From positions 184,580 to 248,579 of the IMG/VR virus record IMGVR_UViG_3300009093_000035: a stretch of 64,000 nucleotides of DNA. One strand, written 5' to 3'. This document shows positions 3,863 through 39,833 of the stretch, in pieces. Both the position numbers and the translations under genes were made by a program. The stretch's first letter is position 1. Every line of letters begins with the position of its first letter. The notes under the pieces were generated by a model, which did no database searches, was not told where the DNA came from, and was given only the letters and a program-made list of their open reading frames with translations.

Positions 3863-3933
3863 TTCTCGGCCGTGGGATCGAACCACGATTCGCGGATTCA
3901 AAGTCCGCTGTCCTGCCGTTGGACGAGCCGAGA
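3863..3933 (-). tRNA. tRNA-Gln(UUG)
   Basis: Cloverleaf; anticodon arm GCGGA-CTTTGAA-TCCGC. Confidence 0.9.
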
Positions 3934-3937
3934 TCAA

Positions 3938-4013
3938 TTCGGGAGGAAGGGGTCGAACCTTCTTCTGCGGATTCAAAGTCCGCGGTCCTAGCCAGCGCGT
4001 AGACGACTCCCGA
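3938..4013 (-). tRNA. tRNA-Gln(UUG)
   Basis: Cloverleaf; GCGGA-CTTTGAA-TCCGC. Confidence 0.85.
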
Positions 4014-4196
4014 TCAACGCTCGAAGGAGCGTCGTTGCAGGAGAGCCGGAAGCTGGCGCTTGAATTCGGGCCGCAAGATGGAGAACCTTCGCGAGAAGAT
4101 ACCCCACTCGGACGCGGACGTCTCCTCGAAAAGCGGGATGTACACATACCCGCCTTCAGTTCGGAGCCCGTCCTTCTTCGTCTCGCTCATCTTACA

Positions 4197-4268
4197 TGAC
4201 CCCACGGGGAATTGAACCCACGTTCCGGAGGGTGAAAATCTCCGATCCTAACCAATAGACGATGGGGC
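4197..4268 (-). tRNA. tRNA-Glu(UUC)
   Basis: Cloverleaf; loop TTTTCAC. Confidence 0.85.
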
Positions 4269-4289
4269 CAAGAGGAAACCAGAAACCAG

Positions 4290-4362
4290 AGCCCTCAGTC
4301 GGGATCGAACCGACGACATCCGCATTACAAGGGCGGTGCTCTTCCAACTGAGCTATGAGGGC
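4290..4362 (-). tRNA. tRNA-Thr(UGU)
   Basis: Cloverleaf; loop CTTGTAA. Confidence 0.9.
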
Positions 4363-4393
4363 GAAGGAAGGGGCGGCGAACCGCCCCTCTCAC

Positions 4394-6028
4394 TCACAGT
4401 GCCGCAGCCGCCTCCTGAGCGGCGACCGGGGCCGGGGCCTTCTCTTCGAGAGAGACGGCCTCGATCTTCTTCACCCAGTGATCCTTGCCCGAGCCCTTGA
4501 CGAACTCGGTCATGAGGGTGAAGACCTCGTCGGAGAAGCCGCCGACGTTGAGGATGTCCTCACGCGTCGGAGCCTGGCGAGAACCGTTCGGCGCGAGGTC
4601 GATGCAGACCATCTTCGCCTTCGGGTTCCGAGCGCGGAGAGCCTCCCACTCGACCATCGCCGCCGTCGGAGACGACGTGTGGCCAGAGGTGTAGGCGTTG
4701 TGGACGACCTTCGTGTCCATCCACGACTCGTTGTCCGAGGCGTAGGTGACGGCGTCCACCTTCTCCTTGTTGTGGTTGAGCGCCCTCATCGGCGCCGAGC
4801 AGTTCGTCCCGCCCGGCGGGCAAGACGCGATCTGGTTCGCGATCGTCATGATCGAGTCCCGCGGGTTGAACCGAAGGTTGATCACGTTCTCCGTGAACGG
4901 GAGAACGATCGCGTCCGGGTTCCGACGCATGAGCGTCGCAGCGATCAGGGCCGCCACGTCACGGCAGGTGACCTTCGTCGCCATCTCGCGCTTCCCCGTG
5001 ACCGGAGACGCCATCGACCCGGAGACGTCCGGGAAGACTGCGATTCGACCCTCGAAGGCCGGAACGTTCTTCGTCGCGATCTCCATCGCGTCCTGGAGAG
5101 CGTTCTGGACCTCCATCGGGACACCCGAGGTGTTCCGGTAGGCGATCAGGAGCTGGTACGGGAAGACCCGAGCCTTCGCGATCGACTCCTCGTCGCGGAG
5201 CTTCGCAGCGATGATCTTCACCATCGCCTTGTCCTCGAAGACGCCGTGGCGGAGGAACGTGTTGAGGTTCATCCGCACCGTCTGCCACGAGGCCGAACGT
5301 GCCAGCTCGATCCACTGGGCCTTCGTCAGCTTCGTGTTCGTGAGCATCAGGAACGGCACGTCCGGGATCGGACGCGACGGATCCTTCTTCCACGCCTCGA
5401 ACTCACGAAGCAGCGGGTCCGCCTTCTCCAGGTCGAACTTCTTCCCCACGAGCCACGCGTAGGTCTCCTTCCGAGCGTCCGTCGCCGGCTTCGGGTGGAC
5501 CATCTTGATCACGTCCGCGATCGACGGCTTGTCGCCCGTCGCCCGGATCAGCTGAGCATCGGTGCGCGCAGCGAACCACGCCTCGACCATCTTCTTCGGA
5601 GCCGTCCCGAGGGACTTCCGGCCGACCTTCCCGGAGCGGATGATCTGGACGAAGTTCCGGACCATCTTCGGGTTGTCGAGGATCCGCGAGAACGACGCCC
5701 GAAGGGCCGCGATACCTGCCGGTCCCCGAGTCGTGAGGTGAGCCGCGAGGAGCGCCGGAGCGTCCTTCATGAAGGCGGACTTCCGCCCGTAGACGGCCGT
5801 CTTCGCGACGAACTCCGGAGAGACCTCGGCCGCAAGCTTCAGGATCGCGTCCAGCTGCTCCTCGTCCGACGTGTAGAACGTCGACCCGAGACAGCCGGTT
5901 GCGGTGTACTGAGCGAGGGCCTCCTTCGGGCCCGCCTTGTAGGCGAGACCGCCGGCCGCGTTGAACATGTCGGCGATCGGCGCGACGCGACCCGCCGGAG
6001 CGGACTTGAAAAGCTTCTTGTTTGCCAC
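4394..6028 (-). CDS. rsr: Ro60/Rsr TROVE-domain RNA-binding protein with C-terminal vWA domain
   Basis: Likely GTG start at 6028 (MANKKLFKS, preceded by AAGGGG); N.AGG.AY, FVAKTAVYGR, MVRNF, VRMNL, ARVFPYQL, MIDAS DVSGSM, GGTNCS, SDNESW, GGFSD. Confidence 0.92.
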   Translation of the reverse strand: MANKKLFKSAPAGRVAPIADMFNAAGGLAYKAGPKEALAQYTATGCLGSTFYTSDEEQLDAILKLAAEVSPEFVAKTAVYGRKSAFMKDAPALLAAHLTTRGPAGIAALRASFSRILDNPKMVRNFVQIIRSGKVGRKSLGTAPKKMVEAWFAARTDAQLIRATGDKPSIADVIKMVHPKPATDARKETYAWLVGKKFDLEKADPLLREFEAWKKDPSRPIPDVPFLMLTNTKLTKAQWIELARSASWQTVRMNLNTFLRHGVFEDKAMVKIIAAKLRDEESIAKARVFPYQLLIAYRNTSGVPMEVQNALQDAMEIATKNVPAFEGRIAVFPDVSGSMASPVTGKREMATKVTCRDVAALIAATLMRRNPDAIVLPFTENVINLRFNPRDSIMTIANQIASCPPGGTNCSAPMRALNHNKEKVDAVTYASDNESWMDTKVVHNAYTSGHTSSPTAAMVEWEALRARNPKAKMVCIDLAPNGSRQAPTREDILNVGGFSDEVFTLMTEFVKGSGKDHWVKKIEAVSLEEKAPAPVAAQEAAAAL

Positions 6029-6055
6029 GGTAACACCCCTTCGAACAAAGGAGGG

Positions 6056-6085
6056 CTCTGGCAACTGGATAGGAGTTCCTTCAGG
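6056..6085. repeat. Arm 1 of a 30-nt long-range inverted repeat (partner 14426-14455)
   Basis: Reverse complement CCTGAAGGAACTCCTATCCAGTTGCCAGAG matches 14426-14455 at 28/30. Confidence 0.9.
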
Positions 6086-6229
6086 AAGATTGAACGTGAG
6101 GTCGTTGACGACGAACGCTTGCGTAGAGCGTTGTCCGCGGAGGTTCAGGAGGCTGATCAATTCCTCCCGTAGGCAAGCCTACTTAGCACCAACGTAGAGC
6201 GTCGCCGACAACTCGGCCTGACCTCACGA

Positions 6230-6301
6230 AGCGGGTGGTGGGAATCGAACCCACGATCTTCGCGTTGGCAACGCGCTGCTCTACCGCTGAGCTACACCCG
6301 C
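6230..6301 (-). tRNA. tRNA-Gly(GCC)
   Basis: Cloverleaf; loop TTGCCAA. Confidence 0.9.
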
Positions 6302-6367
6302 AAAAGAAACTGAGACCCATAGCGACCCGACGTCCCGCGATTACCTCCTCCCCAAGGAGAAACGACC

Positions 6368-6772
6368 ATGGGACTTGATATGCAGCAGCCGTCCGTTGTT
6401 ACCGTCGATGACACCAGCATCGACGCCCTCTACGATGGGATCCCCGAGGATTGCGTCGTGGGGTACGTTCTGAGGGTAATCGCCGCCTCGGACGCTGGAT
6501 ACGCCCACTGGGAGAAACGATTCCTCGCTCGTCGCGTGGGGGAAAGCGAAGTGATCATCGACGGGATCTGCGACGTCTTCCCGCCCATCCTGAACGCCGG
6601 AGCTTCAGCCTGGGCGGTCGAGGTATGCGTCGACAACGGATACGTCTGTGTAGACGTCCAAGGCTCGGCTGATACCCAGGTCTTCTGGTTGGTCGATCTC
6701 CACGGAGACGAGATCCCCACGGTCTCCAACGACCGCATGAACCTGAGGACCTCTCGGCGACTCGCGAGATAG
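6368..6772 (+). CDS. Hypothetical beta-rich protein, paralog of 36891-37298
   Basis: AAGGAG SD; colinear similarity with the 36891-37298 product. Confidence 0.7.
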   Translation: MGLDMQQPSVVTVDDTSIDALYDGIPEDCVVGYVLRVIAASDAGYAHWEKRFLARRVGESEVIIDGICDVFPPILNAGASAWAVEVCVDNGYVCVDVQGSADTQVFWLVDLHGDEIPTVSNDRMNLRTSRRLAR

Positions 6773-6786
6773 ACCCTCGAAGAATC

Positions 6787-6903
6787 TGTCGAGCGAAGCC
6801 GAGGTCTGGAATCGAACCAGAGGGTAGCTCCGCGGAAGCTGGGGACCACCCCACAACGGAATCGAACCGTCTCCCTGCCAATGTCTCCCGATCTCGCTCG
6901 ACA
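6787..6903 (-). ncRNA. Structured RNA with two T-loop arms in a closed stem
   Basis: 10-bp closing stem TGTCGAGCGA/TCGCTCGACA; ACGG-TTCGATT-CCGT and TCTGG-TTCGATT-CCAGA. Confidence 0.6.
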
Positions 6904-6988
6904 CGGAGAGTTGAGGTCCCGCCCCTCATGCCCTTACGGGCACCCATTGTTTAGCAAACAAGGCTGGTCCTCGACCAGGTAACCCTCC
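6904..6988 (-). tRNA. tRNA-Ser(GCU), non-canonical 8/4 fold
   Basis: 8-bp acceptor GGAGGGTT/AACTCTCC, G73, 6-bp D stem, loop TTGCTAA, long V arm, 4-bp T stem GAGG-GGCGGGA-CCTC. Confidence 0.8.
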
Positions 6989-7023
6989 AAACACGTTACT
7001 AACGGACGCTCACGCGAACCGGA

Positions 7024-7110
7024 CGGAGAGTGAGGGACTCGAACCCCCGAGGGCCTCTCGACCCATGCCGGTGTTCAAAGCCGGTGCCTTAGCCGCTAGG
7101 CTAACCCTCC
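7024..7110 (-). tRNA. tRNA-Ser(UGA)
   Basis: Canonical 7/5 cloverleaf, long V arm, loop TTTGAAC. Confidence 0.9.
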
Positions 7111-7191
7111 AGGAGTCTGAGAAACCCGCGCTAATCGAAGACGCCCTTGCCTCTTCGGAGGCATGCTCGCCAGAGCTAGGTTTCCCAGACA

Positions 7192-7276
7192 CGGAAGCTG
7201 GAGGTCCCGACCCTCAGAGCCTTTCGACTCCCAACCGCTTTCGAGACGGTGCCGATCCCTGATCGGTTCAACTTCC
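7192..7276 (-). tRNA. tRNA-Ser(CGA), non-canonical 8/4 fold
   Basis: Acceptor GGAAGTTG/CAGCTTCC, D stem CCGATC/GATCGG, loop CTCGAAA, T arm GAGG-GTCGGGA-CCTC. Confidence 0.8.
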
Positions 7277-7384
7277 AATTCTACGTTCTGGCCCCGCCAC
7301 GGAGCCTAGACGACCAGGCAAACTGGCGGGTCGATTGGATGGAGACCTTTGCGTCTCGGATCCGTCGCAGGCCAGAACCTAGAG

Positions 7385-7469
7385 CGGAAAGGAAGGGTCC
7401 CGACCCCCAGACCCTTTCGAGTCCCAACCGCTTTCCAAGCGGTGCCGGCCCCTGGCCAGTTCCCTTTCC
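7385..7469 (-). tRNA. tRNA-Ser(GGA), non-canonical 8/4 fold
   Basis: Acceptor GGAAAGGG/TCCTTTCC, D stem CTGGCC/GGCCGG, loop TTGGAAA, T arm GGGG-GTCGGGA-CCCT. Confidence 0.8.
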
Positions 7470-7473
7470 AAAC

Positions 7474-7634
7474 AGCTCGCTCGTCTCAGCGTGTATAGCC
7501 ATCACACTTCATCATCGTCGTCGCTACTCGGATTCGAACCGAGTCTCCTGGGCTCTACCATAGCGTGGCGCCAGCCACTCTCGCTCCGATTCTGATGCAC
7601 GGATTCGAACCGTGAACTCTGAGACTCACGAACC
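7474..7634 (-). ncRNA. Double tRNA-elbow RNA (permuted tRNA module enclosing a second T-arm module)
   Basis: Closing GTCTCAG/CTGAGAC; T arm CACGG-TTCGAAT-CCGTG; CATCA/TGATG; D-like GTGT-GATGGCTAT-ACAC; inner GCTA..CTCGG-TTCGAAT-CCGAG-TAGC. Confidence 0.6.
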
Positions 7635-7651
7635 TTCGGGCTGCAGCCCTA

Positions 7652-7772
7652 CCCGGAACGCGGGATTCGAACCCGCCTGAAGGGAAGGGTTGCTAGACCT
7701 CCCCACCGCCGCCTTTCCCTGTCCTCTAGCGAACAGGTACAGACAGCCGCTCACCATCTGGCGTACTTCCGA
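7652..7772 (-). ncRNA. tRNA-like RNA with elongated anticodon and variable arms
   Basis: CGGAA/TTCCG acceptor, AGATGGT D-loop, GCGGG-TTCGAAT-CCCGC T arm; two long hairpins with complementary loops GCTAGA/TCTAGC. Confidence 0.55.
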
Positions 7773-7844
7773 TCGGGGTGACAGGGATCGAACCTGCGAT
7801 TTCTCGACCCCCAGCCGAGCGCGATACCACTTCGCTACACCCCG
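7773..7844 (-). tRNA. tRNA-Pro(GGG)
   Basis: Cloverleaf; CTCGG-CTGGGGG-TCGAG. Confidence 0.9.
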
Positions 7845-7897
7845 AAGAAACTAGAAGACCGAGGTCCTGGAGCCTTTCAACTCCAGGACCGATCAGG

Positions 7898-8446
7898 TCA
7901 GGACCCCTCTTCGATCGGAGCATTCCAGTACACGTAGGAGGCCCACGCGTCCGGGATGTTCGTCAACGAAAACCGCATGGTGACTACCGGGAGATACGCG
8001 GGCTTCACGGGCTGCTTGCGCAGCTTCATCCCCGCGCGCTCCGGAGTCCGGTCGGCCTTCTTCTCGTTGCACGAGTAGCAGGCCATCACGATGTTCTCCC
8101 AGGTCGTCCTACCGCCGTGAGAGCGGGGGGTGACGTGGTCGTACGTGAGCTTCGAGAGCGGGAGCTTCCCGGTACCCGGAGGGCAGTACTGACAGGTGAA
8201 GTTGTCCCGCGTCGCTACGTTCACCCGAGAGAACTTCACGGCCTGCTTCTTGCCGCGGATCCTCCCGAGGAGACGAACGACGGCCGGCATCTTGAAGGAG
8301 AGGGTCACGTGGATTTCCTCGTTGTACTCCTCCACTACCTCGGCGACGTTGTCGAGGACCATACACACGGCCCTCTGCCAGTCCACGATCCTGTGGGGTA
8401 CCCACCCCTGATCCAATACGAGAGTTGTTTGCACGGCCTTACCCAC
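7898..8446 (-). CDS. HNH endonuclease (McrA-like)
   Basis: RDNFTCQYC, LTYDHVTPRSHGGRTTWENIVMACYSCNEKK; type often found in tRNA arrays. Confidence 0.92.
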   Translation of the reverse strand: MGKAVQTTLVLDQGWVPHRIVDWQRAVCMVLDNVAEVVEEYNEEIHVTLSFKMPAVVRLLGRIRGKKQAVKFSRVNVATRDNFTCQYCPPGTGKLPLSKLTYDHVTPRSHGGRTTWENIVMACYSCNEKKADRTPERAGMKLRKQPVKPAYLPVVTMRFSLTNIPDAWASYVYWNAPIEEGS

Positions 8447-8469
8447 CTTTCCTGAGCTGTTGTTTTGGT

Positions 8470-8552
8470 TGCGAGAGGAGGGAGTCGAACCCTCACGCCC
8501 CGAAGGGCACCGATTTTTGAGACCGGCGCGTCTGCCATTCCGCCACTCTCGC
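8470..8552 (-). tRNA. tRNA-Leu(CAA)
   Basis: Cloverleaf, V arm; loop CTCAAAA. Confidence 0.92.
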
Positions 8553-8578
8553 GTCTACTGAAACTTACTCGAAAGGGA

Positions 8579-8664
8579 TGCCCGGGGGGAGAGTCGAACT
8601 CCCACGACCGCTAGGATCGCCGCCTTCTGAGGACGGTGTGTCTACCAAGTTCCACCACCCGGGC
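8579..8664 (-). tRNA. tRNA-Leu(CAG)
   Basis: Loop CTCAGAA, V arm. Confidence 0.92.
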
Positions 8665-8680
8665 TCAAAAACCTACTCAC

Positions 8681-8762
8681 TGCGGAAGAGGGGACTTGAA
8701 CCCCTACGCCACAAGGACACTGGAACCTAAACCCAGCGCGTCTGCCATTCCGCCACTTCCGC
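8681..8762 (-). tRNA. tRNA-Leu(UAG)
   Basis: Loop TTTAGGT, V arm. Confidence 0.92.
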
Positions 8763-8768
8763 TCTACA

Positions 8769-8851
8769 TGGGGACGGGGGGACTTGAACCCCCACGTCAC
8801 GAAGGACACTAGCACCTCAAGCTAGCGCGTCTGCCTTTCCGCCACGTCCCC
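8769..8851 (-). tRNA. tRNA-Leu(GAG)
   Basis: Loop TTGAGGT, V arm. Confidence 0.92.
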
Positions 8852-8868
8852 ATTACGAATCGAACCAG

Positions 8869-8954
8869 TGCTCGGGGGGAGAGTCGAACTCCCATGACCG
8901 CGAAGGATCGTTGGATTCTTAGTCCAGTGTGTCTGCCAGTTCCACCACCCGAGC
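8869..8954 (-). tRNA. tRNA-Leu(AAG)
   Basis: Loop CTAAGAA, Leu-type D and V arms. Confidence 0.85.
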
Positions 8955-9030
8955 GTACGAACCGAAGATTGTCCAAGATCGAGAGGGGCCCTCCGAGGAA
9001 TCCCTCGGGGGCTGATCCTCCCGTCCGGTA

Positions 9031-9102
9031 TGCGCGAAGAGGGGATTGAACCCCCGACCGTCGCCGTGTAAAGGCGCTGCTCTTCCGCTGAGCTATCCGC
9101 GC
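9031..9102 (-). tRNA. tRNA-Val(UAC)
   Basis: Loop TTTACAC. Confidence 0.9.
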
Positions 9103-9107
9103 GTTGA

Positions 9108-9199
9108 TGGACCTACCTGGACTCGAACCAGGTCAATCGCCGCTCGACCACCCCAGGTTTTCCTTGCTGTGAGGCGATTACGTCACTGAGGTTAGGCCC
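9108..9199 (-). ncRNA. Mini-tmRNA-like RNA (tRNA-like domain only)
   Basis: Acceptor GGGCCTA/TAGGTCC with G3.U70 and A73, stemless D region, helix AATCGCC/GGCGATT, GA then CCTGG-TTCGAGT-CCAGG. Confidence 0.6.
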
Positions 9200-9302
9200 A
9201 TCGAATTGGTTCTCCATGCGCGCTATTCGGAGGAGAAGCCCGAAATGTACGGCGACCGGACTACGTGGCCCACACCACCCGTTATGTCGCTGCGCTTTGG
9301 TC

Positions 9303-9375
9303 TGCACGACCGGAGGATCGAACTCCGCTAGAACGGCTTGTGATACCGTCGCCCTCTCCAGATGGCTCGCCGTGC
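9303..9375 (-). tRNA. tRNA-Val(CAC), atypical D arm
   Basis: GACGGT-ATCACAA-GCCGTT; acceptor GCACGGC/GTCGTGC. Confidence 0.75.
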
Positions 9376-9521
9376 GTCAGGCTCGTCTCGACCCGCGGCC
9401 CCCGAGAGGGCGGAACCCCATCAGGACCATCACTACCGCCACCGGGGGCCAGAGGATGGACTCGACTGCGAGACGAACACGTACTTTGAAGGGCATCCCC
9501 TACCCTACTCGAAGAAACCAA

Positions 9522-9593
9522 TCGGGGTGACAGGGATCGAACCTGCGATCTCACCGTCCCGAACGGTGCGCGATACCACTTCGCTACACCCCG
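9522..9593 (-). tRNA. tRNA-Pro(CGG)
   Basis: CACCG-TTCGGGA-CGGTG. Confidence 0.92.
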
Positions 9594-9769
9594 ATAAATC
9601 GTACTTCGGCGGGTCTCTCACCCCGCATCCTTCCAGGTCCGGATTCCCGTCCGTCTACGCGGCCTTGTACCGCTCCCTCGCTGCTTGTCGTCAGCGGCCC
9701 TGTACGATCGTTCACGAGAAGGGTTCGCCCCGACGCTGCAGACGCCGAGACTACTTTTCCGACTCGCTA

Positions 9770-9838
9770 TCCCTCCCGACGGAATCGAACCGCCTCGTAC
9801 GCCCGTATGAAAGGCATCGCCTCGCCAGAAAGAGAGGG
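9770..9838 (-). tRNA. tRNA(CAU) (Met or Ile2) lacking a D stem
   Basis: Acceptor CCCTCTC/GGGAGGG, loop TTCATAC, T arm GGCGG-TTCGATT-CCGTC. Confidence 0.6.
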
Positions 9839-9845
9839 GTGGACA

Positions 9846-9918
9846 CGTCTCCAGTAGGATTCGAACCTACAATGGACCCTTCGGAGGGGTCAGTGATATC
9901 CAGTTTCACCATGGAGAC
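9846..9918 (-). tRNA. tRNA-Arg(CCG)
   Basis: GACCC-CTCCGAA-GGGTC. Confidence 0.88.
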
Positions 9919-9941
9919 ATTGGCCTTCTACCAAACCAGAG

Positions 9942-10013
9942 CGTCTTCGGAAGGATTCGAACCTTCAATAAGCGGTTCGTAGCCGCTCGTGATATCCATT
10001 TCACCACGAAGAC
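9942..10013 (-). tRNA. tRNA-Arg(ACG)
   Basis: AGCGG-CTACGAA-CCGCT. Confidence 0.9.
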
Positions 10014-10031
10014 ATGAGTCAGAAACAGGAG

Positions 10032-10103
10032 CGTCCACGGAGGGAGTTGAACCCACGACCTGTCGCTTCGTAGGCGACCGCTCTTCCTCTGAGCTACGCG
10101 GAC
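10032..10103 (-). tRNA. tRNA-Arg(ACG)
   Basis: GTCGC-CTACGAA-GCGAC. Confidence 0.9.
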
Positions 10104-10115
10104 ATGAACCGAGAG

Positions 10116-10187
10116 CGTCCCCGGAGGGATTCGAACCCCCGACCGACCGCTTAGAAGGCGATCGCTCTTCCTCTGAGCTACGAGGAC
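10116..10187 (-). tRNA. tRNA-Arg(UCU)
   Basis: Loop CTTCTAA. Confidence 0.9.
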
Positions 10188-10214
10188 ATTGGCTTGCACG
10201 GAAACCCCTACGAA

Positions 10215-10286
10215 AGGTGCGGGTGAGAATCGAACTCACCTCAACCAGGGTTGCAATCTGATGCCCTCAGCCAGAGGGACCGCACC
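10215..10286 (-). tRNA. tRNA-Cys(GCA)
   Basis: Loop TTGCAAC, U73. Confidence 0.8.
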
Positions 10287-10299
10287 AAAGAGAACTAGA

Positions 10300-10363
10300 G
10301 GCCGACAAGTAGCGCCGAGAGGGGGTTACCGTGCAAAGGTGTACTCCCGGCAAGTATTCGGCC
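10300..10363 (-). ncRNA. Y RNA-like #1 (minimal)
   Basis: 5' GGCCGAAU..GGAGUACA / 3' CUUGUCGGCC stem shared with five other copies. Confidence 0.7.
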
Positions 10364-10365
10364 AG

Positions 10366-10437
10366 AGCGGGTGGCGGGGATCGAACCCGCGACGTCCTGG
10401 ATGGGAACCAAGCGCTCTACCGCTGAGCCACACCCGC
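10366..10437 (-). tRNA. tRNA-Gly(CCC)
   Basis: Loop TTCCCAT. Confidence 0.9.
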
Positions 10438-10523
10438 TTGTATTAGATCGAAGTTACGGAAGTTACCAGACCTTATCGAACCTCATGGTAACTCTCGGCT
10501 ACATGGACGGAACCAGAAACCAG

Positions 10524-10594
10524 AGCGGGCAGCGAGAATCGAACTCGCGTCTTCGGCTTGGAAGGCCGAGGCCAAGCCACTTGACCATGCCCGC
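10524..10594 (-). tRNA. tRNA-Gly(UCC)
   Basis: TCGGC-CTTCCAA-GCCGA. Confidence 0.88.
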
Positions 10595-10606
10595 ATACGA
10601 ACCGGA

Positions 10607-11012
10607 TGGACTCGTCCGGAATTGAACCGGAGTCCACGAAGTCTACTACGATCGAGTACCACGCGCGTCTTCAACTCTTACGCCTGTCTTTCTAACGAGG
10701 AAGGCGCGAGGCTTGACAACCTCTCTTTCGGAACTCCCCGCGAAGTCTGCTCGGTTCCCCGCCTCGACTTCGATCGTCCCTCAGATCGCCTTTCGGCTCC
10801 CGCTGAGGTACAGCCGGGATTCCCCTAGCTCGATTACGCCAACGAGGAGAGTGCTAGGGACTCTCCTCGCCGACGGATCAGGCCGCCTGAGCGAGCTGAT
10901 CGTAGCTGCTGTCGTTCGCAGTTACTGTTGGTTGGCTTGATAACCCGGCCTGCCTACCACCCGGAGCGCGCACTCTCTCGTTTCGAACCCCATGTCGAAA
11001 CCTGTCGAGCCC
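10607..11012 (-). ncRNA. ssrA: tmRNA; tag ANDSSYDQLAQAA* at 10878-10919
   Basis: 5' GGGCTCGACAGGTTTCGAC, 3' GGACTCCGGTTCAATTCCGGACGAGTCCA, G3.U70, resume context TAACT-GCG AAC GAC. Confidence 0.95.
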
Positions 11013-11028
11013 GAAGACACTAGACCAG

Positions 11029-11101
11029 AGCCATCGGCGGGAGTTGAACCCGCGACCTCTCGCATACCAAGCGAGCGCTCTTCCAACTGAGCTACGAAGG
11101 C
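11029..11101 (-). tRNA. tRNA-Thr(GGU)
   Basis: Loop TTGGTAT. Confidence 0.9.
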
Positions 11102-11106
11102 AAAAG

Positions 11107-11179
11107 AGCCGGCAGGGGCGCTCGAATCCCCCATCTCCCGCTTACGAAACGGGCGCATCGCCATCTATGCTTTACCGGC
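11107..11179 (-). tRNA. tRNA-Thr(CGU)
   Basis: Loop TTCGTAA. Confidence 0.8.
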
Positions 11180-11276
11180 AAGTTCCCAAGGTGTCCCGAG
11201 AGGACCACTCTCGTTCTTCCGAGGGCGCTTGGACGTTTTTCAAGGGTTGCTGGTTAGGCTCCTCTCACCGTCCTAG

Positions 11277-11348
11277 TGGATCCTACAGGGATTGAACCTG
11301 CGGCCTCTCGGGTGCAAACCGAGCGCTCTCCCGCTGAGCTAAGGACCC
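11277..11348 (-). tRNA. tRNA-Ala(UGC)
   Basis: Loop TTTGCAC, G3.U70. Confidence 0.92.
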
Positions 11349-11352
11349 AAAG

Positions 11353-11420
11353 TGGACCGAGCGGATTCGAACCGCTTCCTTCCGTGTTCCACGGACGCTC
11401 TTCCTTTTGAGCTACGATCC
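11353..11420 (-). pseudogene. tRNA-like element with collapsed anticodon loop
   Basis: Normal D and T arms, but anticodon arm TCCGTG-GAA-CACGGA and 6-bp acceptor. Confidence 0.6.
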
Positions 11421-11478
11421 TCTGTCTCGCCCCGGAAGCGAAACAGTTCGTCAATCGTCCGCGCGAACGACCAACTAG

Positions 11479-11551
11479 TGGACAAGAGGGGGATCGAACC
11501 CCTGACCTACGCCATGCCATGGCGTCGCTCTCCCAGCTGAGCTACTCGCCC
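11479..11551 (-). tRNA. tRNA-Ala(GGC)
   Basis: Loop ATGGCAT, G3.U70. Confidence 0.92.
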
Positions 11552-11820
11552 AAAACGACCCTCGGTAATACAGGCCGCCAACGAAGGAACAAGGCTACTC
11601 TCGTCCGACTCCCGAAGGAATCGTTCTCGTACGTGTCTCCGACCCGGGGCTCCTAGAAGCGCGGAACCGGAACCGACGCGAGATGATCCTCACCGACAAG
11701 GATCGACAGGTACTGCACGGTCTGCTTGCGCCTACCGTTTCCCTCCTTGAGTTTGGAGCCGGACCCGCCTAGGGTTTCTCGCCACCACAGCGTCCTAGGT
11801 CGGGTTGGTGTCCGGCGTGA

Positions 11821-11890
11821 TCGCGGCCCCAAGAGTTGAACTTGGCATCCCTGGGTTATGAGCCCTGGGCAGCGTCCCCGCTGCACCGCA
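11821..11890 (-). tRNA. Atypical initiator-like tRNA(CAU) with miniature D arm
   Basis: GGG-CTCATAA-CCC; D arm CAGCG-GGGA-CGCTG. Confidence 0.6.
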
Positions 11891-11897
11891 TCTACAA

Positions 11898-11971
11898 GAG
11901 CGCGAGAAGGATTTGAACCTCCGACCTACGGGTTATGAGCCCGTCGAGCTGCCAGACTGCTCCACCGCGCA
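11898..11971 (-). tRNA. tRNA-fMet(CAU)
   Basis: Three G-C pairs in the anticodon stem, 1-72 mismatch. Confidence 0.85.
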
Positions 11972-12043
11972 TCGTCCAGGTGGGGATCGAACCCACGACC
12001 TTCCGCGTGTCGAGCGGATGCTCTTCCTCTGAGCCACTGGACG
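11972..12043 (-). tRNA. tRNA-Val(GAC)
   Basis: TCCGC-TCGACAC-GCGGA. Confidence 0.88.
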
Positions 12044-12061
12044 GTCTCGATCTAAGAACCA

Positions 12062-12134
12062 TGGAGCAGATGGGATTCGAACCCAACGCACCTCGTGTAT
12101 CAGACGAAGTAGTGCGACCAGCAACTTCCGCTCC
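12062..12134 (-). tRNA. tRNA-Ile(GAU)
   Basis: Loop CTGATAC. Confidence 0.75.
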
Positions 12135-12154
12135 GTTTTCGAGCCAGACACTAG

Positions 12155-12228
12155 GGTGATCGGGGGGAGTTGAACCCACCGTACCTCGGGTCACAGCCGA
12201 GTGCCTTAACCGTTAGGCTACGACCACC
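12155..12228 (-). tRNA. tRNA-His(GUG) with encoded G-1
   Basis: CTCGG-CTGTGAC-CCGAG; G-1:C73. Confidence 0.9.
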
Positions 12229-12239
12229 ATGAAGAGATT

Positions 12240-12371
12240 CGGGTGACAAGAGCGGAGAAGACGTTTTTTGGACTGCCGCTCTACCATCTGAGCTACCACC
12301 CCCTTTCGGAGACGGGCGGGACTCGAACCCGCGACCCGCAGTGTTGTTGTAGTCCTATTCCAATTCACCCG
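12240..12371 (-). ncRNA. Y RNA-like #2 (YrlA-type, permuted tRNA module)
   Basis: CGGGUGAAU..GACUACA / CUUGUCACCCG; T arm GCGGG-TTCGAGT-CCCGC, GAAA-capped acceptor, then D arm TAGCTCAGATGGTAGAGC. Confidence 0.85.
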
Positions 12372-12372
12372 A

Positions 12373-12445
12373 CGTTCCCGGGAGGACTCGAACCTCCGAC
12401 CTGCCGTTTAGGAAACGGCCCCTCTATCCACTGAGGTACGGGAAC
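12373..12445 (-). tRNA. tRNA-Arg(CCU)
   Basis: GCCGT-TTCCTAA-ACGGC. Confidence 0.9.
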
Positions 12446-12449
12446 ACGA

Positions 12450-12588
12450 TTGCGAGAGAGGGACTTGAACCCCCACGAGCGCTTCCGTTACTTCCCTGGG
12501 AAGCGCTTCCCGTACGGGTTTCACGGATGGGCCTAGGACCCTGTCTCTCCGAGTCGCCTCGGCGCGTCTGCCATTTCGCCATCTCGCA
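12450..12588 (-). ncRNA. Anticodon-less oversized tRNA-Leu mimic A
   Basis: Acceptor TGCGAGA/TCTCGCA, Leu D arm GGCGAAATGGCAGACGC, anticodon arm capped by GCGA, three hairpins in the variable region, normal T arm. Confidence 0.7.
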
Positions 12589-12596
12589 TCGAACAC

Positions 12597-12748
12597 TAGG
12601 GAGAAGGGGAATCGAACCCCCACCGGGCTCTACAGGACTCTCCGCGGTTCGCGACCCTCGGATCCTCCCGTTGGCTCGGGGTGCGCACCCCTTACCGTCC
12701 CTGCCGGAACTTTCATCCCGGTGCGTCTACCAGTTCCGCCATCTCCCG
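12597..12748 (-). ncRNA. Anticodon-less oversized tRNA-Leu mimic B
   Basis: Leu D arm GGCGGAACTGGTAGACGC, CCGGGAT-GAAA-GTTCCGG, ~80-nt structured variable region, normal T arm. Confidence 0.7.
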
Positions 12749-12770
12749 TCAACGAACGGAAGGAAAAGTT

Positions 12771-12903
12771 TGGGCGACAAGTGTTGGCGAAGATCTTTTC
12801 GTCGCTCTACCAACTGAGCTACCGCCCCGTGAAAGTGGGGCGGGCTGGACTCGAACCAGCGGCCTCCGGCTTGAAATGCTGTAATCCTCTCCGAATTCAC
12901 CCA
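12771..12903 (-). ncRNA. Y RNA-like #3 (YrlA-type)
   Basis: UGGGUGAAU..GAUUACA / CUUGUCGCCCA; GCTGG-TTCGAGT-CCAGC, closed acceptor CCGCCCC/GGGGCGG, D arm TAGCTCAGTTGGTAGAGC. Confidence 0.85.
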
Positions 12904-12904
12904 A

Positions 12905-12977
12905 CGTTCCCGGAGGGGATCGAACCCCCGACCTGCGGTTTCGAAGACCGCCGCTCTTCCGGCTGAGCTACGAGAAC
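12905..12977 (-). tRNA. tRNA-Arg(UCG)
   Basis: GCGGT-CTTCGAA-ACCGC. Confidence 0.9.
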
Positions 12978-13019
12978 CCTCGATTTATGGCTTCGAGGTA
13001 CCTTTGCGCGCGAAGGAAG

Positions 13020-13094
13020 CGTCCCGTGGGGGATTTGAACCCGCCGTCGCCAGATTGAGAGTCTAGCATCCTAGGCCAACTAGAAGAACGGGAC
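13020..13094 (-). tRNA. tRNA-Glu(CUC)
   Basis: Loop CTCTCAA. Confidence 0.88.
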
Positions 13095-13099
13095 ATAGA

Positions 13100-13175
13100 G
13101 GCGAGACAAGAGAGACCGAGACGAGGGGCTTTCGCCCCACATTACCCAAAATGTAGTCCCGATCGAATTCTCACC
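13100..13175 (-). ncRNA. Y RNA-like #4 (minimal)
   Basis: GGUGAGAAU..GACUACA / CUUGUCUCGCC; GGGGC-GAAA-GCCCC hairpin. Confidence 0.72.
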
Positions 13176-13176
13176 A

Positions 13177-13249
13177 TGGACAGGAGGGGGATTGAACCCC
13201 TGACCTCTGCATTGCGAACGCAGCGCTCTCCCAGCTGAGCTACCCGCCC
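13177..13249 (-). tRNA. tRNA-Ala(CGC)
   Basis: Loop TTCGCAA, G3.U70. Confidence 0.92.
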
Positions 13250-13390
13250 AAACGAAAACCAGGTTCTCGAATCGGACTCGGGTAGGTCGATTCCCTTTCG
13301 GGAGGTGGCCTACCCTATCCCTAGCTCCTCGGGCCTGGCGCTACCGAGAAGATCCGAGCCAGCGAGGACCGAGGTCCCCGCGAAGATAGC

Positions 13391-13514
13391 CGTGCGACAA
13401 GAGTGACAGCGACGTTTTCTAGGCCCGAGCCTCGCTCCCTTTCGGGAACGACCAGGATTCGAACCTGGCTCGATTGTTGTTCATACAATGTAGTCCCCAT
13501 CGAGTATTCGCACG
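13391..13514 (-). ncRNA. Y RNA-like #5 (T arm plus GAAA-closed acceptor, degenerate D arm)
   Basis: CGUGCGAAU..GACUACA / CUUGUCGCACG; CCAGG-TTCGAAT-CCTGG; TCGTTCCC-GAAA-GGGAGCGA. Confidence 0.8.
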
Positions 13515-13516
13515 AG

Positions 13517-13589
13517 TCGGGATGACCGGATTCGAACCGACGTCTCCTGCGCCCAAGGCAGGTGCTAAACCAGGCTCAGCTACATCCCG
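13517..13589 (-). tRNA. tRNA-Pro(UGG)
   Basis: CCTGC-CTTGGGC-GCAGG. Confidence 0.9.
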
Positions 13590-13600
13590 AACAGAAACCA

Positions 13601-13676
13601 TGCAGCGAACTGGAGTTGAACCAGTGCCTCCCGGGTTTCAACCGAGCGCTCTACCTATGGGCTGAGCTATCGCTGC
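13601..13676 (-). tRNA. tRNA-Phe(GAA)
   Basis: Loop TTGAAAC. Confidence 0.85.
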
Positions 13677-13679
13677 GTA

Positions 13680-13752
13680 TGCTACGGGTCGGAATTGAAC
13701 CGACGACACCCCGCTCTTCAGGCGAGTGCTCTACCAACTGAGCTACCGTAGC
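13680..13752 (-). tRNA. tRNA-Phe(GAA)
   Basis: Loop CTGAAGA. Confidence 0.9.
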
Positions 13753-13758
13753 AAGACA

Positions 13759-13832
13759 CGCCCCCGAAGAGAATCGAACTCTCCTCGACCCTGCTTGACA
13801 AGCAGGCGTCTTCACCAGAGGACTACGAGGGC
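13759..13832 (-). tRNA. tRNA-Asp(GUC)
   Basis: CCTGC-TTGTCAA-GCAGG. Confidence 0.88.
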
Positions 13833-13850
13833 AGGAACCAGGAAATTTAA

Positions 13851-13939
13851 GGCGACAAAGATCCCGAAGACACAGAGCGAGCCTTTCGGCCCTCTCTTCT
13901 GGTTTTGGTAGAAGAATGTAGTCTTCAGAGCATTCGCCC
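13851..13939 (-). ncRNA. Y RNA-like #6 (minimal)
   Basis: GGGCGAAU..GACUACA / UUUGUCGCC; GAAA-capped hairpin. Confidence 0.7.
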
Positions 13940-13940
13940 A

Positions 13941-14008
13941 CGGGCTGTTAGGGACTCGAACCCAGCGCGGTCGGTTTTGGAGGCCAACCTGTGCCCTGCA
14001 CCCAGCCC
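13941..14008 (-). tRNA. tRNA-Trp(CCA) with miniature D arm
   Basis: Loop CTCCAAA; D arm GTGC-AGG-GCAC. Confidence 0.7.
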
Positions 14009-14157
14009 AATAGCTGAGACCGTCCGGCCTACGGGCCCGCACGATCTCGTACCTCCTCCTACACATGGCAGGTGAGATCTAAGAATAGCGACCGGCGCTC
14101 GCCCCGAGTGCTCGTCCTCCCTACCGGAGGCTGCGTTCTCGAAGTGCTTTCGGTCTA

Positions 14158-14229
14158 CTCCTGGGGCAGGAGTCGAACCTGCGGTAGGCGAGTTAACAGC
14201 TCGCTGCCTTACCACTTGGCTACCCAGGA
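14158..14229 (-). tRNA. tRNA-Asn(GUU)
   Basis: GCGAG-CTGTTAA-CTCGC. Confidence 0.92.
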
Positions 14230-14269
14230 AGGATCTCAACGGACCCCATCGGAAGAAACGAAGGAGGAA

Positions 14270-14341
14270 CTCCGGCAGTAGGGGTCGAACCTACGACATC
14301 CTGGTTAACAGCCAGGCGCTCTTCCACTGAGCTATACCGGA
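14270..14341 (-). tRNA. tRNA-Asn(GUU)
   Basis: CCTGG-CTGTTAA-CCAGG. Confidence 0.92.
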
Positions 14342-14425
14342 ATGTGAGGGAGGCCCTCCCGTACCCGAGCCCTTGCGAGGCGATTCGAGTACGAGAGTCC
14401 CCTCTCCGCGCCCTTGGGGAGGGCG

Positions 14426-14455
14426 CCTGAAGGAACTCCTATTCAGTTGTCAGAG
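14426..14455. repeat. Arm 2 of the long-range inverted repeat; boxA-like on the minus strand
   Basis: Minus strand CTCTGACAACTGAATAGGAGTTCCTTCAGG. Confidence 0.85.
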
Positions 14456-14516
14456 ACCTCGGAACACAGAGAGCCGTAGTTCACTACGTACTCCAGCCAC
14501 AGGGTGGCTTTTTCAA

Positions 14517-14587
14517 TTCCCAGTCGAGGATTCGAACCTCAGTTGTCCGAGTCAGATTCGGAAGTCCTGCCGCTAGACGAACCGGGA
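14517..14587 (-). tRNA. tRNA-Gln(CUG)
   Basis: TCCGA-ATCTGAC-TCGGA. Confidence 0.88.
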
Positions 14588-14659
14588 TGGGACACCGGGG
14601 ACTCAAACCCCGTTCTTCCGATTAAGAGTCGGATGCTTCATCACTAAAGCTTGTGTCCC
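14588..14659 (-). tRNA. tRNA-Lys(CUU)
   Basis: TCCGA-CTCTTAA-TCGGA. Confidence 0.85.
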
Positions 14660-14677
14660 GAACTGGAACCGAGGAAC

Positions 14678-14749
14678 TGGGACCGGTGGGGATCGAACCC
14701 ACGACCGTCGGGTTAAAAGCCCGCTGTTCTACCGCTGAACTACGGTCCC
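14678..14749 (-). tRNA. tRNA-Lys(UUU)
   Basis: Loop CTTTTAA. Confidence 0.9.
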
Positions 14750-14796
14750 GAGAGGGGAACCGCAGGGTTTGAGGTTGACGTACATCTTTCGAACCA

Positions 14797-14879
14797 TGGA
14801 GACGCCAGGAATCGAACCTGATTTCCTCCGAAGAGGGGCGGGGTTACAGTCCGCCTACGAGGCCACTCGTATCATCTCC
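14797..14879 (-). tRNA. tRNA-Tyr(GUA)
   Basis: Loop CTGTAAC, V arm. Confidence 0.8.
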
Positions 14880-14890
14880 AAAAGGAACCA

Positions 14891-14974
14891 TGGAGTGTGA
14901 GGGATTCGAACCCTCAATGTCCGAAGACTCCTGATTTACAGTCAGGTGGGGCTACCAATGCCCACGTACACTCC
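14891..14974 (-). tRNA. tRNA-Tyr(GUA)
   Basis: CCTGA-CTGTAAA-TCAGG, V arm. Confidence 0.82.
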
Positions 14975-32424: not shown

Positions 32425-32451
32425 TGACGACTCTACGCGTAACGTCTGAAG

Positions 32452-39757: not shown

Positions 39758-39833
39758 TGGGTCCGACCGGATTCGAACCGGTACATGTCCGTTTATGAGA
39801 CGGGGGTTCTGGAACCTGTTGAACTACGGACCC
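39758..39833 (-). tRNA. Solitary tRNA(CAU), Ile2 or elongator Met
   Basis: Acceptor GGGTCCG/CGGACCC, loop CTCATAA, T arm ACCGG-TTCGAAT-CCGGT. Confidence 0.85.

What the first reader, a model, noticed from the sequence alone, without database searches (positions are those of the whole stretch)
6904..7469. Three tRNA-Ser with non-canonical 8/4 fold and GxCGGGA T-loops
Seen: Ser(GCU), Ser(CGA) and Ser(GGA) each have an 8-bp acceptor, 4-bp T stem, 6-bp D stem with 3-nt loop, G73, a long V arm and T-loop G(G/T)CGGGA instead of TTCRANY. The neighbouring Ser(UGA) is canonical. Established: 8/4 allo-tRNA/tRNA-Ser folds have been described in bacteria. Inference: an altered elbow may evade host toxins or nucleases targeting tRNA-Ser; standard annotators likely miss these.
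Basis: partly seen in the sequence, partly recalled or inferred. Interest (0 to 1): 0.7.

Follow-up and report, generated by a model that had tools for sequence, protein, structure and literature searches.

The report
Phage serine tRNAs with 8/4 fold
Three unannotated genes in a giant soil phage's tRNA cluster are real serine tRNAs of an unusual, already published shape (8/4) with a re-wired elbow; they match about 96% of the phage's serine codons, and standard tRNA finders miss them.

Summary
On the minus strand, 7385-7469 (anticodon GGA), 7192-7276 (CGA) and 6904-6988 (GCU) are 85-nt genes. Each folds into an 8-bp acceptor stem, 6-bp D stem with 3-nt loop, long variable arm, 4-bp T stem, T loop GKCGGGA and discriminator G. 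ARAGORN and the Rfam tRNA and tRNA-Sec models miss all three.

They are not chance. I collected 156 distinct relatives from phage tRNA arrays and from accessory tRNA arrays in bacterial genomes. Base-pair covariation strongly supports 8/4 over 7/5, and 154 of 156 carry one of the four standard serine anticodons. The three genes supply exactly the serine isoacceptors the phage's near-complete tRNA set otherwise lacks. They are cognate to about 96% of its serine codons.

The odd T loop belongs to a co-varying elbow. T-loop positions 54:58 are G:G, A:A or U:A. The middle D-loop base pairs with position 55 as G/U or A/G.

The class, (8/4) tRNA-Ser in bacteriophages, was published by Mukai et al. 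2017, so this is a new member of a known kind. Expression and charging could not be tested.

The parts
7385..7469 (-). (8/4) tRNA-Ser, anticodon GGA (7434-7436). T loop GTCGGGA at 7398-7404, D loop AGG, discriminator G at 7385, no encoded CCA.
   Evidence: Fold alone. Model R1 97 bits. Independent model R2 87 bits, E 3.5e-23. Missed by ARAGORN and Rfam.
7192..7276 (-). (8/4) tRNA-Ser, anticodon CGA (7241-7243). T loop GTCGGGA at 7205-7211, D loop AGG, discriminator G at 7192.
   Evidence: MFE equals centroid equals the 8/4 cloverleaf. R1 96 bits, R2 86 bits. About 80% identical to unannotated genes in Caulobacter phage BL57 and Stenotrophomonas phage DLP_6. Identical in contigs of two further rhizosphere runs.
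6904..6988 (-). (8/4) tRNA-Ser, anticodon GCU (6953-6955). T loop GGCGGGA at 6917-6923, D loop GAG, discriminator G at 6904. There is a C27/U43 mismatch at the top of the anticodon stem.
   Evidence: Fold. R1 87 bits, R2 81 bits. 75% identical over its full length to an unannotated gene in Microbacterium phage Cece. Variant contigs from other metagenomes carry compensatory D-stem changes.
7021..7111 (-). Canonical 7/5 tRNA-Ser(UGA), the fourth member of the serine module.
   Evidence: ARAGORN. Rfam tRNA 50 bits. Only 34 and 38 bits with the 8/4 models.
3863..14974 (-). The tRNA array that holds the serine module. ARAGORN finds 44 tRNAs and a tmRNA (10607-11012) in this span, plus one more tRNA-Met at 39758-39833. 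At least four further tRNAs are seen only by Rfam.
16647..17855 (+). Nucleotidyltransferase with a PolyA_pol head domain (CCA-adding enzyme family). It is the likely source of the 3' CCA that the array's tRNA genes do not encode.
   Evidence: PF01743, 55 bits against a cut-off of 23.

Best explanation
The three elements are working serine tRNA genes of the published (8/4) tRNA-Ser class. With the canonical Ser(UGA) between them they form a four-gene serine module (GGA, CGA, UGA, GCU) inside the phage's near-complete tRNA array. Inferred pathway: they are transcribed with the array and trimmed by host RNase P and 3' nucleases. CCA is then added, probably by the phage's own CCA-adding-type enzyme. 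The host seryl-tRNA synthetase charges them through the long variable arm, G73 and the invariant G1-C72/G2-C71. EF-Tu carries them because the acceptor/T branch is still 12 bp (8+4 = 7+5). They then read UCG, UCC/UCU and AGC/AGU, which make up about 96% of the phage's serine codons. The odd T loop is an alternative, co-evolved elbow rather than damage: a purine-purine 54:58 pair (G:G) replaces U54:A58. In tRNA A an A/G combination replaces G18/U55. One consequence follows from established enzyme specificity: without U54 and A58 (and without U55 in A) these tRNAs cannot receive m5U54 or m1A58 (nor pseudouridine 55 in A). The elbow therefore does not depend on those host enzymes.
For: Shown here:
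- Fold of each sequence alone.
- Homologues in tRNA arrays of phages of Caulobacter, Stenotrophomonas and Microbacterium, and in two relatives of this phage with the same synteny next to tRNA-Gly(GCC) and Ro60.
- Of the 80 fetched IMG/VR stretches (110 carry the same T-arm motif), nearly all are full-length members.
- Covariation on 82 distinct sequences: 94% of cells paired against 65% when shuffled. The 8th acceptor pair is GC 27, UA 23, AU 20, CG 4, GU 1. The 4-bp T stem is 99.7% paired.
- Over 156 distinct members the 8th pair forms in 147, while the alternative 5th T-stem pair is possible in only 49.
- Anticodons are GCU 55, UGA 46, CGA 27, GGA 26 and others 2. Discriminator is G in 100 of 104.
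- The three genes supply exactly the Ser isoacceptors missing from ARAGORN's list.
- Ser codon usage is TCG 39%, TCC 24%, AGC 16%, TCT 12%, AGT 5%, TCA 4%.
- Elbow covariation: 54:58 is G:G 50, U:A 38, A:A 11, others 5. Middle D-loop base against position 55 is G/U 62, A/G 16, exceptions 2.
- Variant contigs of tRNA A show compensatory D-stem changes (U-A to C-G, G-C to A-U) and repair of the 27:43 mismatch.
- The phage encodes a CCA-adding-type enzyme, and no class II SerRS core was found on the contig.

From the literature: 8/4 and 9/3 allo-tRNAs with Ser identity are serylated and used in translation in E. coli, and SerRS accepts 8/4 and 9/3 branches (PMC5389517).
Against: No RNA evidence: no RNA run holding the stretch could be listed, so expression, processing, CCA addition and charging are all inferred. 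The host is unknown, so host SerRS compatibility is untested. tRNA A has a mismatch at 27:43 and could be drawn 7/5. A peat-metagenome variant of A pairs an AGG D loop with an unchanged GGCGGGA T loop, so the 18:55 rule has exceptions. Counts for G:G at 54:58 are inflated, because most loci were fetched with a pattern that required that T loop. Among sequences not selected that way, G:G is 8 of 62. The sequences are related, so the covariation counts are not independent events.
Confidence: 0.8

Rival explanations
1. The 8/4 fold and re-wired elbow exist because they protect. They would make the mobile array's serine tRNAs poor substrates for host (or phage) tRNA-directed nucleases or toxins that recognise the canonical elbow, T loop or acceptor geometry of tRNA-Ser, so translation continues when host tRNA-Ser is attacked. 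This adds to the decoding function rather than replacing it.
For: The fold is found in phage arrays and in sporadic accessory arrays, not in core tRNA sets. One Opitutaceae chromosome has four canonical dispersed Ser tRNAs plus an array with four 8/4 Ser tRNAs. Only about 6 of 61 sampled genomes of that family have strong tandem hits. The phage carries RNA-care genes: Ro60, a CCA-adding-type enzyme and an RNA ligase family protein. T-loop and anticodon-loop tRNases, and phage tRNAs that escape them, are known from the literature (my own knowledge, not checked here).
Against: No nuclease, toxin or defence gene was linked to these tRNAs here. Close relatives of this phage carry 8/4 Ser tRNAs with fully canonical TTCGART T loops, so the odd T loop is not required. 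One isoacceptor of the module (UGA) is canonical in this phage, in Cece and in an Acidimicrobiia array. Shared ancestry of a mobile module explains the distribution equally well.
Confidence: 0.15
2. They are tRNA-like RNAs that do not act in translation, for example decoys, Ro60/Y-RNA-type partners or regulatory RNAs.
For: A Ro60 gene lies about 750 bp away. YrlA-like matches and other odd T-arm-bearing RNAs lie in the same array. Mukai et al. found some allo-tRNAs inactive in translation.
Against: 154 of 156 relatives carry one of the four standard serine anticodons in a 7-nt loop, with G73 and invariant G1-C72/G2-C71. The three fill the exact gaps in the tRNA set and match the phage's most used Ser codons. 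No YrlA match falls on them.
Confidence: 0.04
3. They are decaying pseudogenes of canonical tRNA-Ser.
For: Standard finders reject them. The T loop lacks the TTC motif. A has one stem mismatch.
Against: All five helices are kept by compensatory change across 156 relatives in several phyla of hosts. Elbow positions co-vary. Length is fixed at 85 nt with no indels against an independent model.
Confidence: 0.01

Closest known systems
(8/4) tRNA-Ser of bacteriophages and some bacteria (Mukai et al. 2017, Nucleic Acids Res 45:2776, PMC5389517)
   Same: 8-bp acceptor plus 4-bp T stem (12-bp branch), long V arm, G73, serine anticodons, and location in phage tRNA gene clusters. Caulobacter phage BL57, whose unannotated gene is about 80% identical to tRNA B, also carries an 8/4-looking tRNA-His next to its three 8/4 Ser genes (read by eye). 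That matches the paper's description for alpha-proteobacterial phages.
   Different: Here the D loop has 3 nt (no Y20), and the T loop is GKCGGGA with G54 and G58. The paper's main text does not mention T-loop or D-loop composition; its figures and supplement are not held. The carrier is a soil jumbo-phage contig of unknown host.
allo-tRNA (8/4 and 9/3) of Acidobacteria, Clostridia and Proteobacteria (same paper; review PMC7609411)
   Same: 12-bp branch re-partitioned, long D stem with very small loop, long V arm, SerRS identity elements. Shown to be active in E. coli translation.
   Different: Allo-tRNAs mostly carry non-serine or stop anticodons (35 codons) and are often near toxin-antitoxin genes. 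This family is almost purely serine-decoding and sits in full tRNA arrays. [quoted passage not shown]
Bacterial tRNA-Sec (Rfam RF01852)
   Same: 8-bp acceptor, 6-bp D stem with tiny loop, long V arm, charged by SerRS.
   Different: tRNA-Sec has a 13-bp branch (8/5), a UCA anticodon, and uses SelB instead of EF-Tu. These have 12 bp and Ser anticodons, and RF01852 gives no match.
Accessory tRNA arrays of bacteria and the large tRNA sets of jumbo and huge phages
   Same: Dense one-strand arrays of 20-45 tRNAs with a tmRNA and tRNA-care enzymes. The same serine module order (GGA, CGA, canonical UGA, GCU) occurs in Microbacterium phage Cece.
   Different: The point here is the fold of the serine members. 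Those members are absent from the annotation of the three isolate records I inspected (BL57, DLP_6, Cece).

Membership tests
(8/4) tRNA-Ser (Mukai et al. 2017) | 8-bp acceptor stem and 4-bp T stem (12-bp acceptor/T branch) | tested here: met
   Single-sequence folds. The 8th pair covaries (GC 27, UA 23, AU 20, CG 4, GU 1) and the T stem is 99.7% paired. 8/4 is possible in 147 of 156 members, against 49 of 156 for the 7/5 alternative. For tRNA A alone, both drawings are possible.
(8/4) tRNA-Ser (Mukai et al. 2017) | Long variable arm and discriminator G73 (or U73), the SerRS identity set | tested here: met
   6-bp V stem plus tetraloop in all three, and G at the discriminator position. Family-wide G in 100 of 104.
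(8/4) tRNA-Ser (Mukai et al. 2017) | Serine anticodon | tested here: met
   GGA, CGA and GCU in 7-nt loops. In the family, 154 of 156 carry one of the four standard Ser anticodons.
(8/4) tRNA-Ser (Mukai et al. 2017) | Serylation by SerRS and use in translation | not testable with these tools
   No RNA run was listed. This rests only on the paper's E. coli data for related allo-tRNAs.
allo-tRNA in the strict sense | D tetraloop with Y20 | tested here: not met
   D loops are 3 nt (AGG, AGG, GAG). Some relatives do have AGGY tetraloops.
tRNA-Sec (RF01852) | 13-bp branch (8/5 in bacteria) and UCA anticodon | tested here: not met
   The branch is 12 bp with Ser anticodons. No RF01852 match at E<=10.
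Canonical bacterial type-II tRNA-Ser (RF00005) | 7/5 branch, U8, D loop with G18-G19 in a 3-4-bp D arm, T loop TTCRANY | tested here: not met
   No RF00005 match at E<=10 and no ARAGORN call. The linker is AA or AC, and the T loop is GKCGGGA.
YrlA / bacterial Y RNA (RF02553) | Match to the Y RNA-like model: long closing stem plus tRNA-like module | tested here: not met
   YrlA-like matches lie elsewhere in the array (12768-12903, 12252-12371). None falls on the three genes.

The most novel reading that the evidence does not exclude
The 8/4 serine tRNAs may be a self-contained, horizontally travelling serine-decoding module of mobile tRNA arrays, present in phages and in accessory arrays of at least Verrucomicrobiota, Myxococcota and Actinomycetota. 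Their re-wired elbow (purine-purine 54:58, A/G in place of G18/U55, no U8) would then be adaptive. It would make them independent of host T-loop modification enzymes and/or resistant to elbow- or T-loop-directed tRNases that disable canonical host tRNA-Ser.
Probability: 0.15. Interest if true: 0.75.

Novelty: new member of a known kind. Interest (0 to 1): 0.42.

Why it matters
There are three practical and scientific reasons to care.

- **Annotation gap.** ARAGORN and Rfam miss these genes. In the three isolate phages I checked, most or all serine tRNAs are missing from the GenBank annotation. Here the finders see only 1 of 4 Ser isoacceptors, and the missed ones are cognate to about 96% of Ser codons. 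Comparisons of phage tRNA content with codon usage, or with host range, would be biased for serine. A dedicated covariance model fixes this.
- **A natural structural experiment.** The family shows the tRNA elbow re-wired: three interchangeable 54:58 states, and a two-state middle-D-loop/55 pair. It offers ready-made scaffolds for orthogonal tRNA design.
- **Link to mobile arrays.** The fold tracks mobile tRNA arrays, not core genomes. That makes a long-standing question, why phages carry their own tRNAs, testable for one amino acid in cultured systems (Cece, DLP_6, BL57).

Tried and rejected
- **Rfam.** tRNA, tRNA-Sec and all other families gave no match on the three genes, both on the 13-kb array (E<=1) and on the 1-kb stretch (E<=10).
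- **First IMG/VR pattern.** It combined the V-arm GAAA loop with the T arm. It was too specific and gave only one contig. A T-arm pattern then gave 110.
- **RNA evidence.** No RNA run could be listed. DNA runs gave only contigs.
- **Promoter and terminator scan** of the array: not above shuffled expectation, so it says nothing about transcription units.
- **Nearest record in the phage collection.** By one protein's tblastn, the only hit in the GenBank phage collection was the 485-kb uncultured phage LR745208.1. It has no 8/4 member, only a 37-bit hit.
- **SerRS core, RtcB and T4 Rnl1** were not found on the contig. The contig is only about 56% complete, and the Rnl1 control found nothing anywhere, so that last result is uninformative.
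- **Literature on the odd T loop.** Two searches found no paper on it in phage 8/4 tRNA-Ser. The supplement of Mukai et al. is not held, so I cannot say whether their figures already show it.
- **7/5 reading.** Considered and rejected for the family. It remains possible for tRNA A taken alone.
- **Host.** Not established. There are only leads: the Ro60 gene and the HNH gene of the array have 65-69% DNA matches in tRNA-array loci of Polyangia genomes. The acceptor, D loop and T arm of tRNA A are nearly identical to the Ser(GCU) of Opitutaceae arrays.

Full report
**Setting.** The window is the last 64 kb of a single 248,579-bp contig with 61% G+C. It is held as an IMG/VR virus record with about 56% estimated completeness. 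The DNA occurs almost word for word in a rhizosphere metagenome run. Diverged copies occur in two other rhizosphere runs and one peat run. Between about 3.8 and 15 kb, the minus strand carries a dense tRNA array. ARAGORN finds 45 tRNAs and a tmRNA in the window. Rfam adds at least four more tRNAs. The only serine tRNA either program reports is Ser(UGA) at 7021-7111.

**Observation check.**
- A: 6904-6988, anticodon GCU.
- B: 7192-7276, anticodon CGA.
- C: 7385-7469, anticodon GGA.

Each ends in a discriminator G and encodes no CCA. Folded alone, each gives:
- an 8-bp acceptor stem and a two-base linker (AA, AA, AC);
- a 6-bp D stem closed by a 3-nt loop (AGG, AGG, GAG);
- a 5-bp anticodon stem with a 7-nt loop;
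- a 6-bp variable stem with a tetraloop;
- a 4-bp T stem with T loop GTCGGGA (B, C) or GGCGGGA (A).

For A and B this is both the minimum-energy and the centroid structure. The Rfam tRNA and tRNA-Sec models give no match, even at E<=10 on a 1-kb stretch. The neighbouring Ser(UGA) is a normal 7/5 tRNA at 50 bits. One caveat is that tRNA A taken alone can also be drawn 7/5.

**Not chance.**
- BLAST finds unannotated homologues inside the tRNA arrays of Caulobacter phage BL57, Stenotrophomonas phage DLP_6 and Microbacterium phage Cece.
- A covariance model from eight sequences finds three or four such genes in each of those phages.
- The same model finds four in each of two IMG/VR relatives of this phage, at the same place upstream of tRNA-Gly(GCC) and a Ro60 gene.
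- A scan of IMG/VR for the T-arm motif gave 110 stretches. Of the 80 fetched, nearly all are full-length members, often with further members beside them: 147 hits, 82 distinct.
- A second model built only from those sequences scores C, B and A at 87, 86 and 81 bits without indels. The canonical Ser(UGA) scores 38.

**The fold.**
- On the 82 distinct IMG/VR sequences, 94% of pair cells are standard pairs, against 65% after shuffling and 41-50% when partners are slid.
- 26 of 29 pairs show changes on both sides.
- The diagnostic 8th acceptor pair is GC 27, UA 23, AU 20, CG 4, GU 1, and the 4-bp T stem is 99.7% paired.
- Over all 156 distinct members, the 8th acceptor pair forms in 147. The pair a 7/5 drawing would need is possible in only 49.
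- The inner two D-stem pairs are formed in about 80-84% of members, with many pair types. The 6-bp D stem is therefore typical but not universal. BL57 has a 4-bp stem with a 9-nt loop.

**Identity and role.**
- Anticodons across the 156 members are GCU 55, UGA 46, CGA 27, GGA 26 and two others.
- The discriminator is G in 100 of 104. G1-C72 and G2-C71 are invariant.
- In this phage the three genes supply exactly the serine isoacceptors missing from an otherwise near-complete set.
- In a crude set of 251 ORFs, serine codons are TCG 39%, TCC 24%, AGC 16%, TCT 12%, AGT 5% and TCA 4%. The three non-canonical tRNAs are thus cognate to about 96% of serine codons, and the canonical Ser(UGA) to about 4% by Watson-Crick reading.
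- The contig encodes a CCA-adding-type nucleotidyltransferase 1.7 kb from the array, which fits genes that encode no CCA.
- No class II SerRS core was found, so the host enzyme is the presumed charger.
- Variant contigs of tRNA A from other metagenomes show two compensatory D-stem changes and a change that repairs the 27:43 mismatch.

**The elbow.** The T loop is not degenerate. It varies in a structured way.
- Positions 54:58 are G:G 50, U:A 38, A:A 11 and others 5. G54 never occurs without G58.
- Most G:G cases were selected by my search pattern. Among unselected neighbours the split is U:A 38, A:A 11, G:G 8, others 5.
- Among the 80 members with a 6-bp D stem and 3-nt D loop, the middle D-loop base and T-loop position 55 are G/U in 62, A/G in 16, and otherwise in 2. 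The search pattern put no constraint on the D loop.
- tRNA A (GAG with GGCGGGA) is of the A/G type. B and C are of the G/U type.
- One natural variant of A breaks the rule, pairing AGG with an unchanged T loop.
- C56 and the last D-loop G (the G19:C56 pair) are kept.

I read this as an L-shaped tRNA whose elbow contacts are preserved through alternative base combinations. Close relatives of this phage carry orthologous 8/4 genes with ordinary TTCGART loops, so the state changes easily.

**Where the family lives.** A scan of one genome per prokaryote species with the same motif, filtered by the model, found 55 members. All sit inside large one-strand tRNA arrays, in these groups:
- Opitutaceae and other Verrucomicrobiota;
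- Polyangia (Minicystis rosea, Sandaracinus, Byssovorax);
- Micrococcales;
- Acidimicrobiia.

One complete Opitutaceae chromosome has such an array (23 ARAGORN tRNAs plus four 8/4 Ser). It also has four dispersed canonical serine tRNAs. Only about 6 of 61 sampled genomes of that family have strong tandem hits. The fold therefore belongs to accessory, apparently mobile tRNA arrays and not to core tRNA sets. The module order GGA, CGA, canonical UGA, GCU is the same in this phage and in Microbacterium phage Cece.

**Mechanism.** Most likely (about 0.8) these are ordinary decoders in an unusual body. The chain of steps, all inferred, is transcription with the array, end-processing, CCA addition, serylation via V arm, G73 and the first acceptor pairs, and delivery by EF-Tu. 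EF-Tu delivery is expected because the branch is still 12 bp. The only experimental support is the literature on related allo-tRNAs in E. coli. The association with mobile arrays and with RNA-care genes (Ro60, CCA enzyme, RNA ligase) is compatible with it. Canonical T loops in close relatives, and a canonical UGA member inside the module, argue that the odd elbow is not essential.

**Comparison and novelty.** Mukai et al. 2017 (PMC5389517) already reported (8/4) tRNA-Ser in bacteriophages, together with (8/4) tRNA-His in alpha-proteobacterial phages. BL57 shows just that arrangement. This is a new member of that kind.

What may be new, and I could not verify against their figures or supplement:
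- the co-varying elbow;
- the breadth of the G54:G58 subtype (over 100 viral contigs);
- the link to accessory arrays in Verrucomicrobiota, Myxococcota and Actinomycetota.

The three genes are not tRNA-Sec, not canonical tRNA-Ser and, lacking Y20, not allo-tRNA in the strict sense.

**Limits.** There is no transcript or charging evidence. The host is unknown. The sequences are related, so counts are not independent events. Part of the sample was ascertained through the T-loop motif itself.

Noticed in passing
window 4394-6160 (-); 12768-12903 (-) and 12252-12371 (-): A Ro60 orthologue (TROVE plus Ro60 vWA domains) lies inside the tRNA array. Two sub-threshold YrlA (Y RNA-like) matches of 51 and 40 bits lie further along. 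The Ro60 gene has a 65% DNA match next to 8/4 Ser tRNAs in a Sandaracinus MAG (L177), a possible host or donor lead.
   Followed up: partly
window 6790-6903 (-) and 7515-7735 (-): Unassigned structured RNAs flank the serine module. One is closed by a long terminal stem of about 8 bp and holds two hairpins with TTCGATT loops. The other stretch holds three GGTTCGAATCC T-arm-like hairpins. No tRNA finder or Rfam family claims them; the best match is a weak mascRNA-like hit at 7520-7578. They could be Y-RNA-like partners of Ro60 or tRNA remnants.
   Followed up: partly
window 11107-11179, 4197-4269, 3942-4010, 14798-14879 (all -): Four more tRNAs are missed by ARAGORN but seen by Rfam: Thr(CGU) with an odd T loop, Glu(UUC), a second Gln(UUG), and a second Tyr(GUA). 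The Tyr has a 6-bp D stem with a 4-nt loop (tRNA-Sec-like D arm, 37.5 bits to RF01852) but a 7/5 branch.
   Followed up: partly
L001 (Caulobacter phage BL57) about 1590-1720 (-): By eye, just upstream of BL57's three unannotated 8/4 Ser genes lie an unannotated tRNA-His(GUG) that looks 8/4 and an odd tRNA-Cys(GCA) with a 4-bp D stem and AGG loop. Both have encoded CCA. This matches the Ser/His co-occurrence described by Mukai et al.
   Followed up: no
G001:C1:1668969-1672166 (L224), also L200, L143, L176, L140: Bacterial chromosomes and MAGs of Opitutaceae, Polyangia, Micrococcales and Acidimicrobiia carry accessory arrays of 17-27 tRNAs that include 8/4 Ser genes. In the Opitutaceae arrays all four Ser members have G at T-loop position 55 (NGCRNGA).
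   Followed up: partly
window 7898-8446 (-): An HNH endonuclease gene sits inside the tRNA array. 69% DNA matches to it lie in the tRNA-array loci of Minicystis rosea, Byssovorax and Sandaracinus. It may be a mobility factor of the array.
   Followed up: no
window 10607-11012 (-): A phage-encoded tmRNA (96 bits to RF00023) with tag peptide ANDSSYDQLAQAA lies in the middle of the array.
   Followed up: no
G000:C1:105567-106172 (-), outside the window: An RNA ligase family (PF09414) protein of about 453 aa is encoded elsewhere on the contig. With Ro60 and the CCA-adding-type enzyme, it suggests an RNA-repair tool kit.
   Followed up: no
window 6914 joined to 7396 in run X3: A 301-nt contig from another rhizosphere run joins the 3' end of tRNA A to the T loop of tRNA C, skipping 481 bases. 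It is either a relative with a single chimeric Ser gene or a diverged orthologue aligning in two pieces.
   Followed up: no
window 30856-32919 (-) and 25050-25949 (-): A Cpn60/TCP-1 family chaperonin-like protein (687 aa) and a peptidase C39-like protein are encoded downstream of the array.
   Followed up: no
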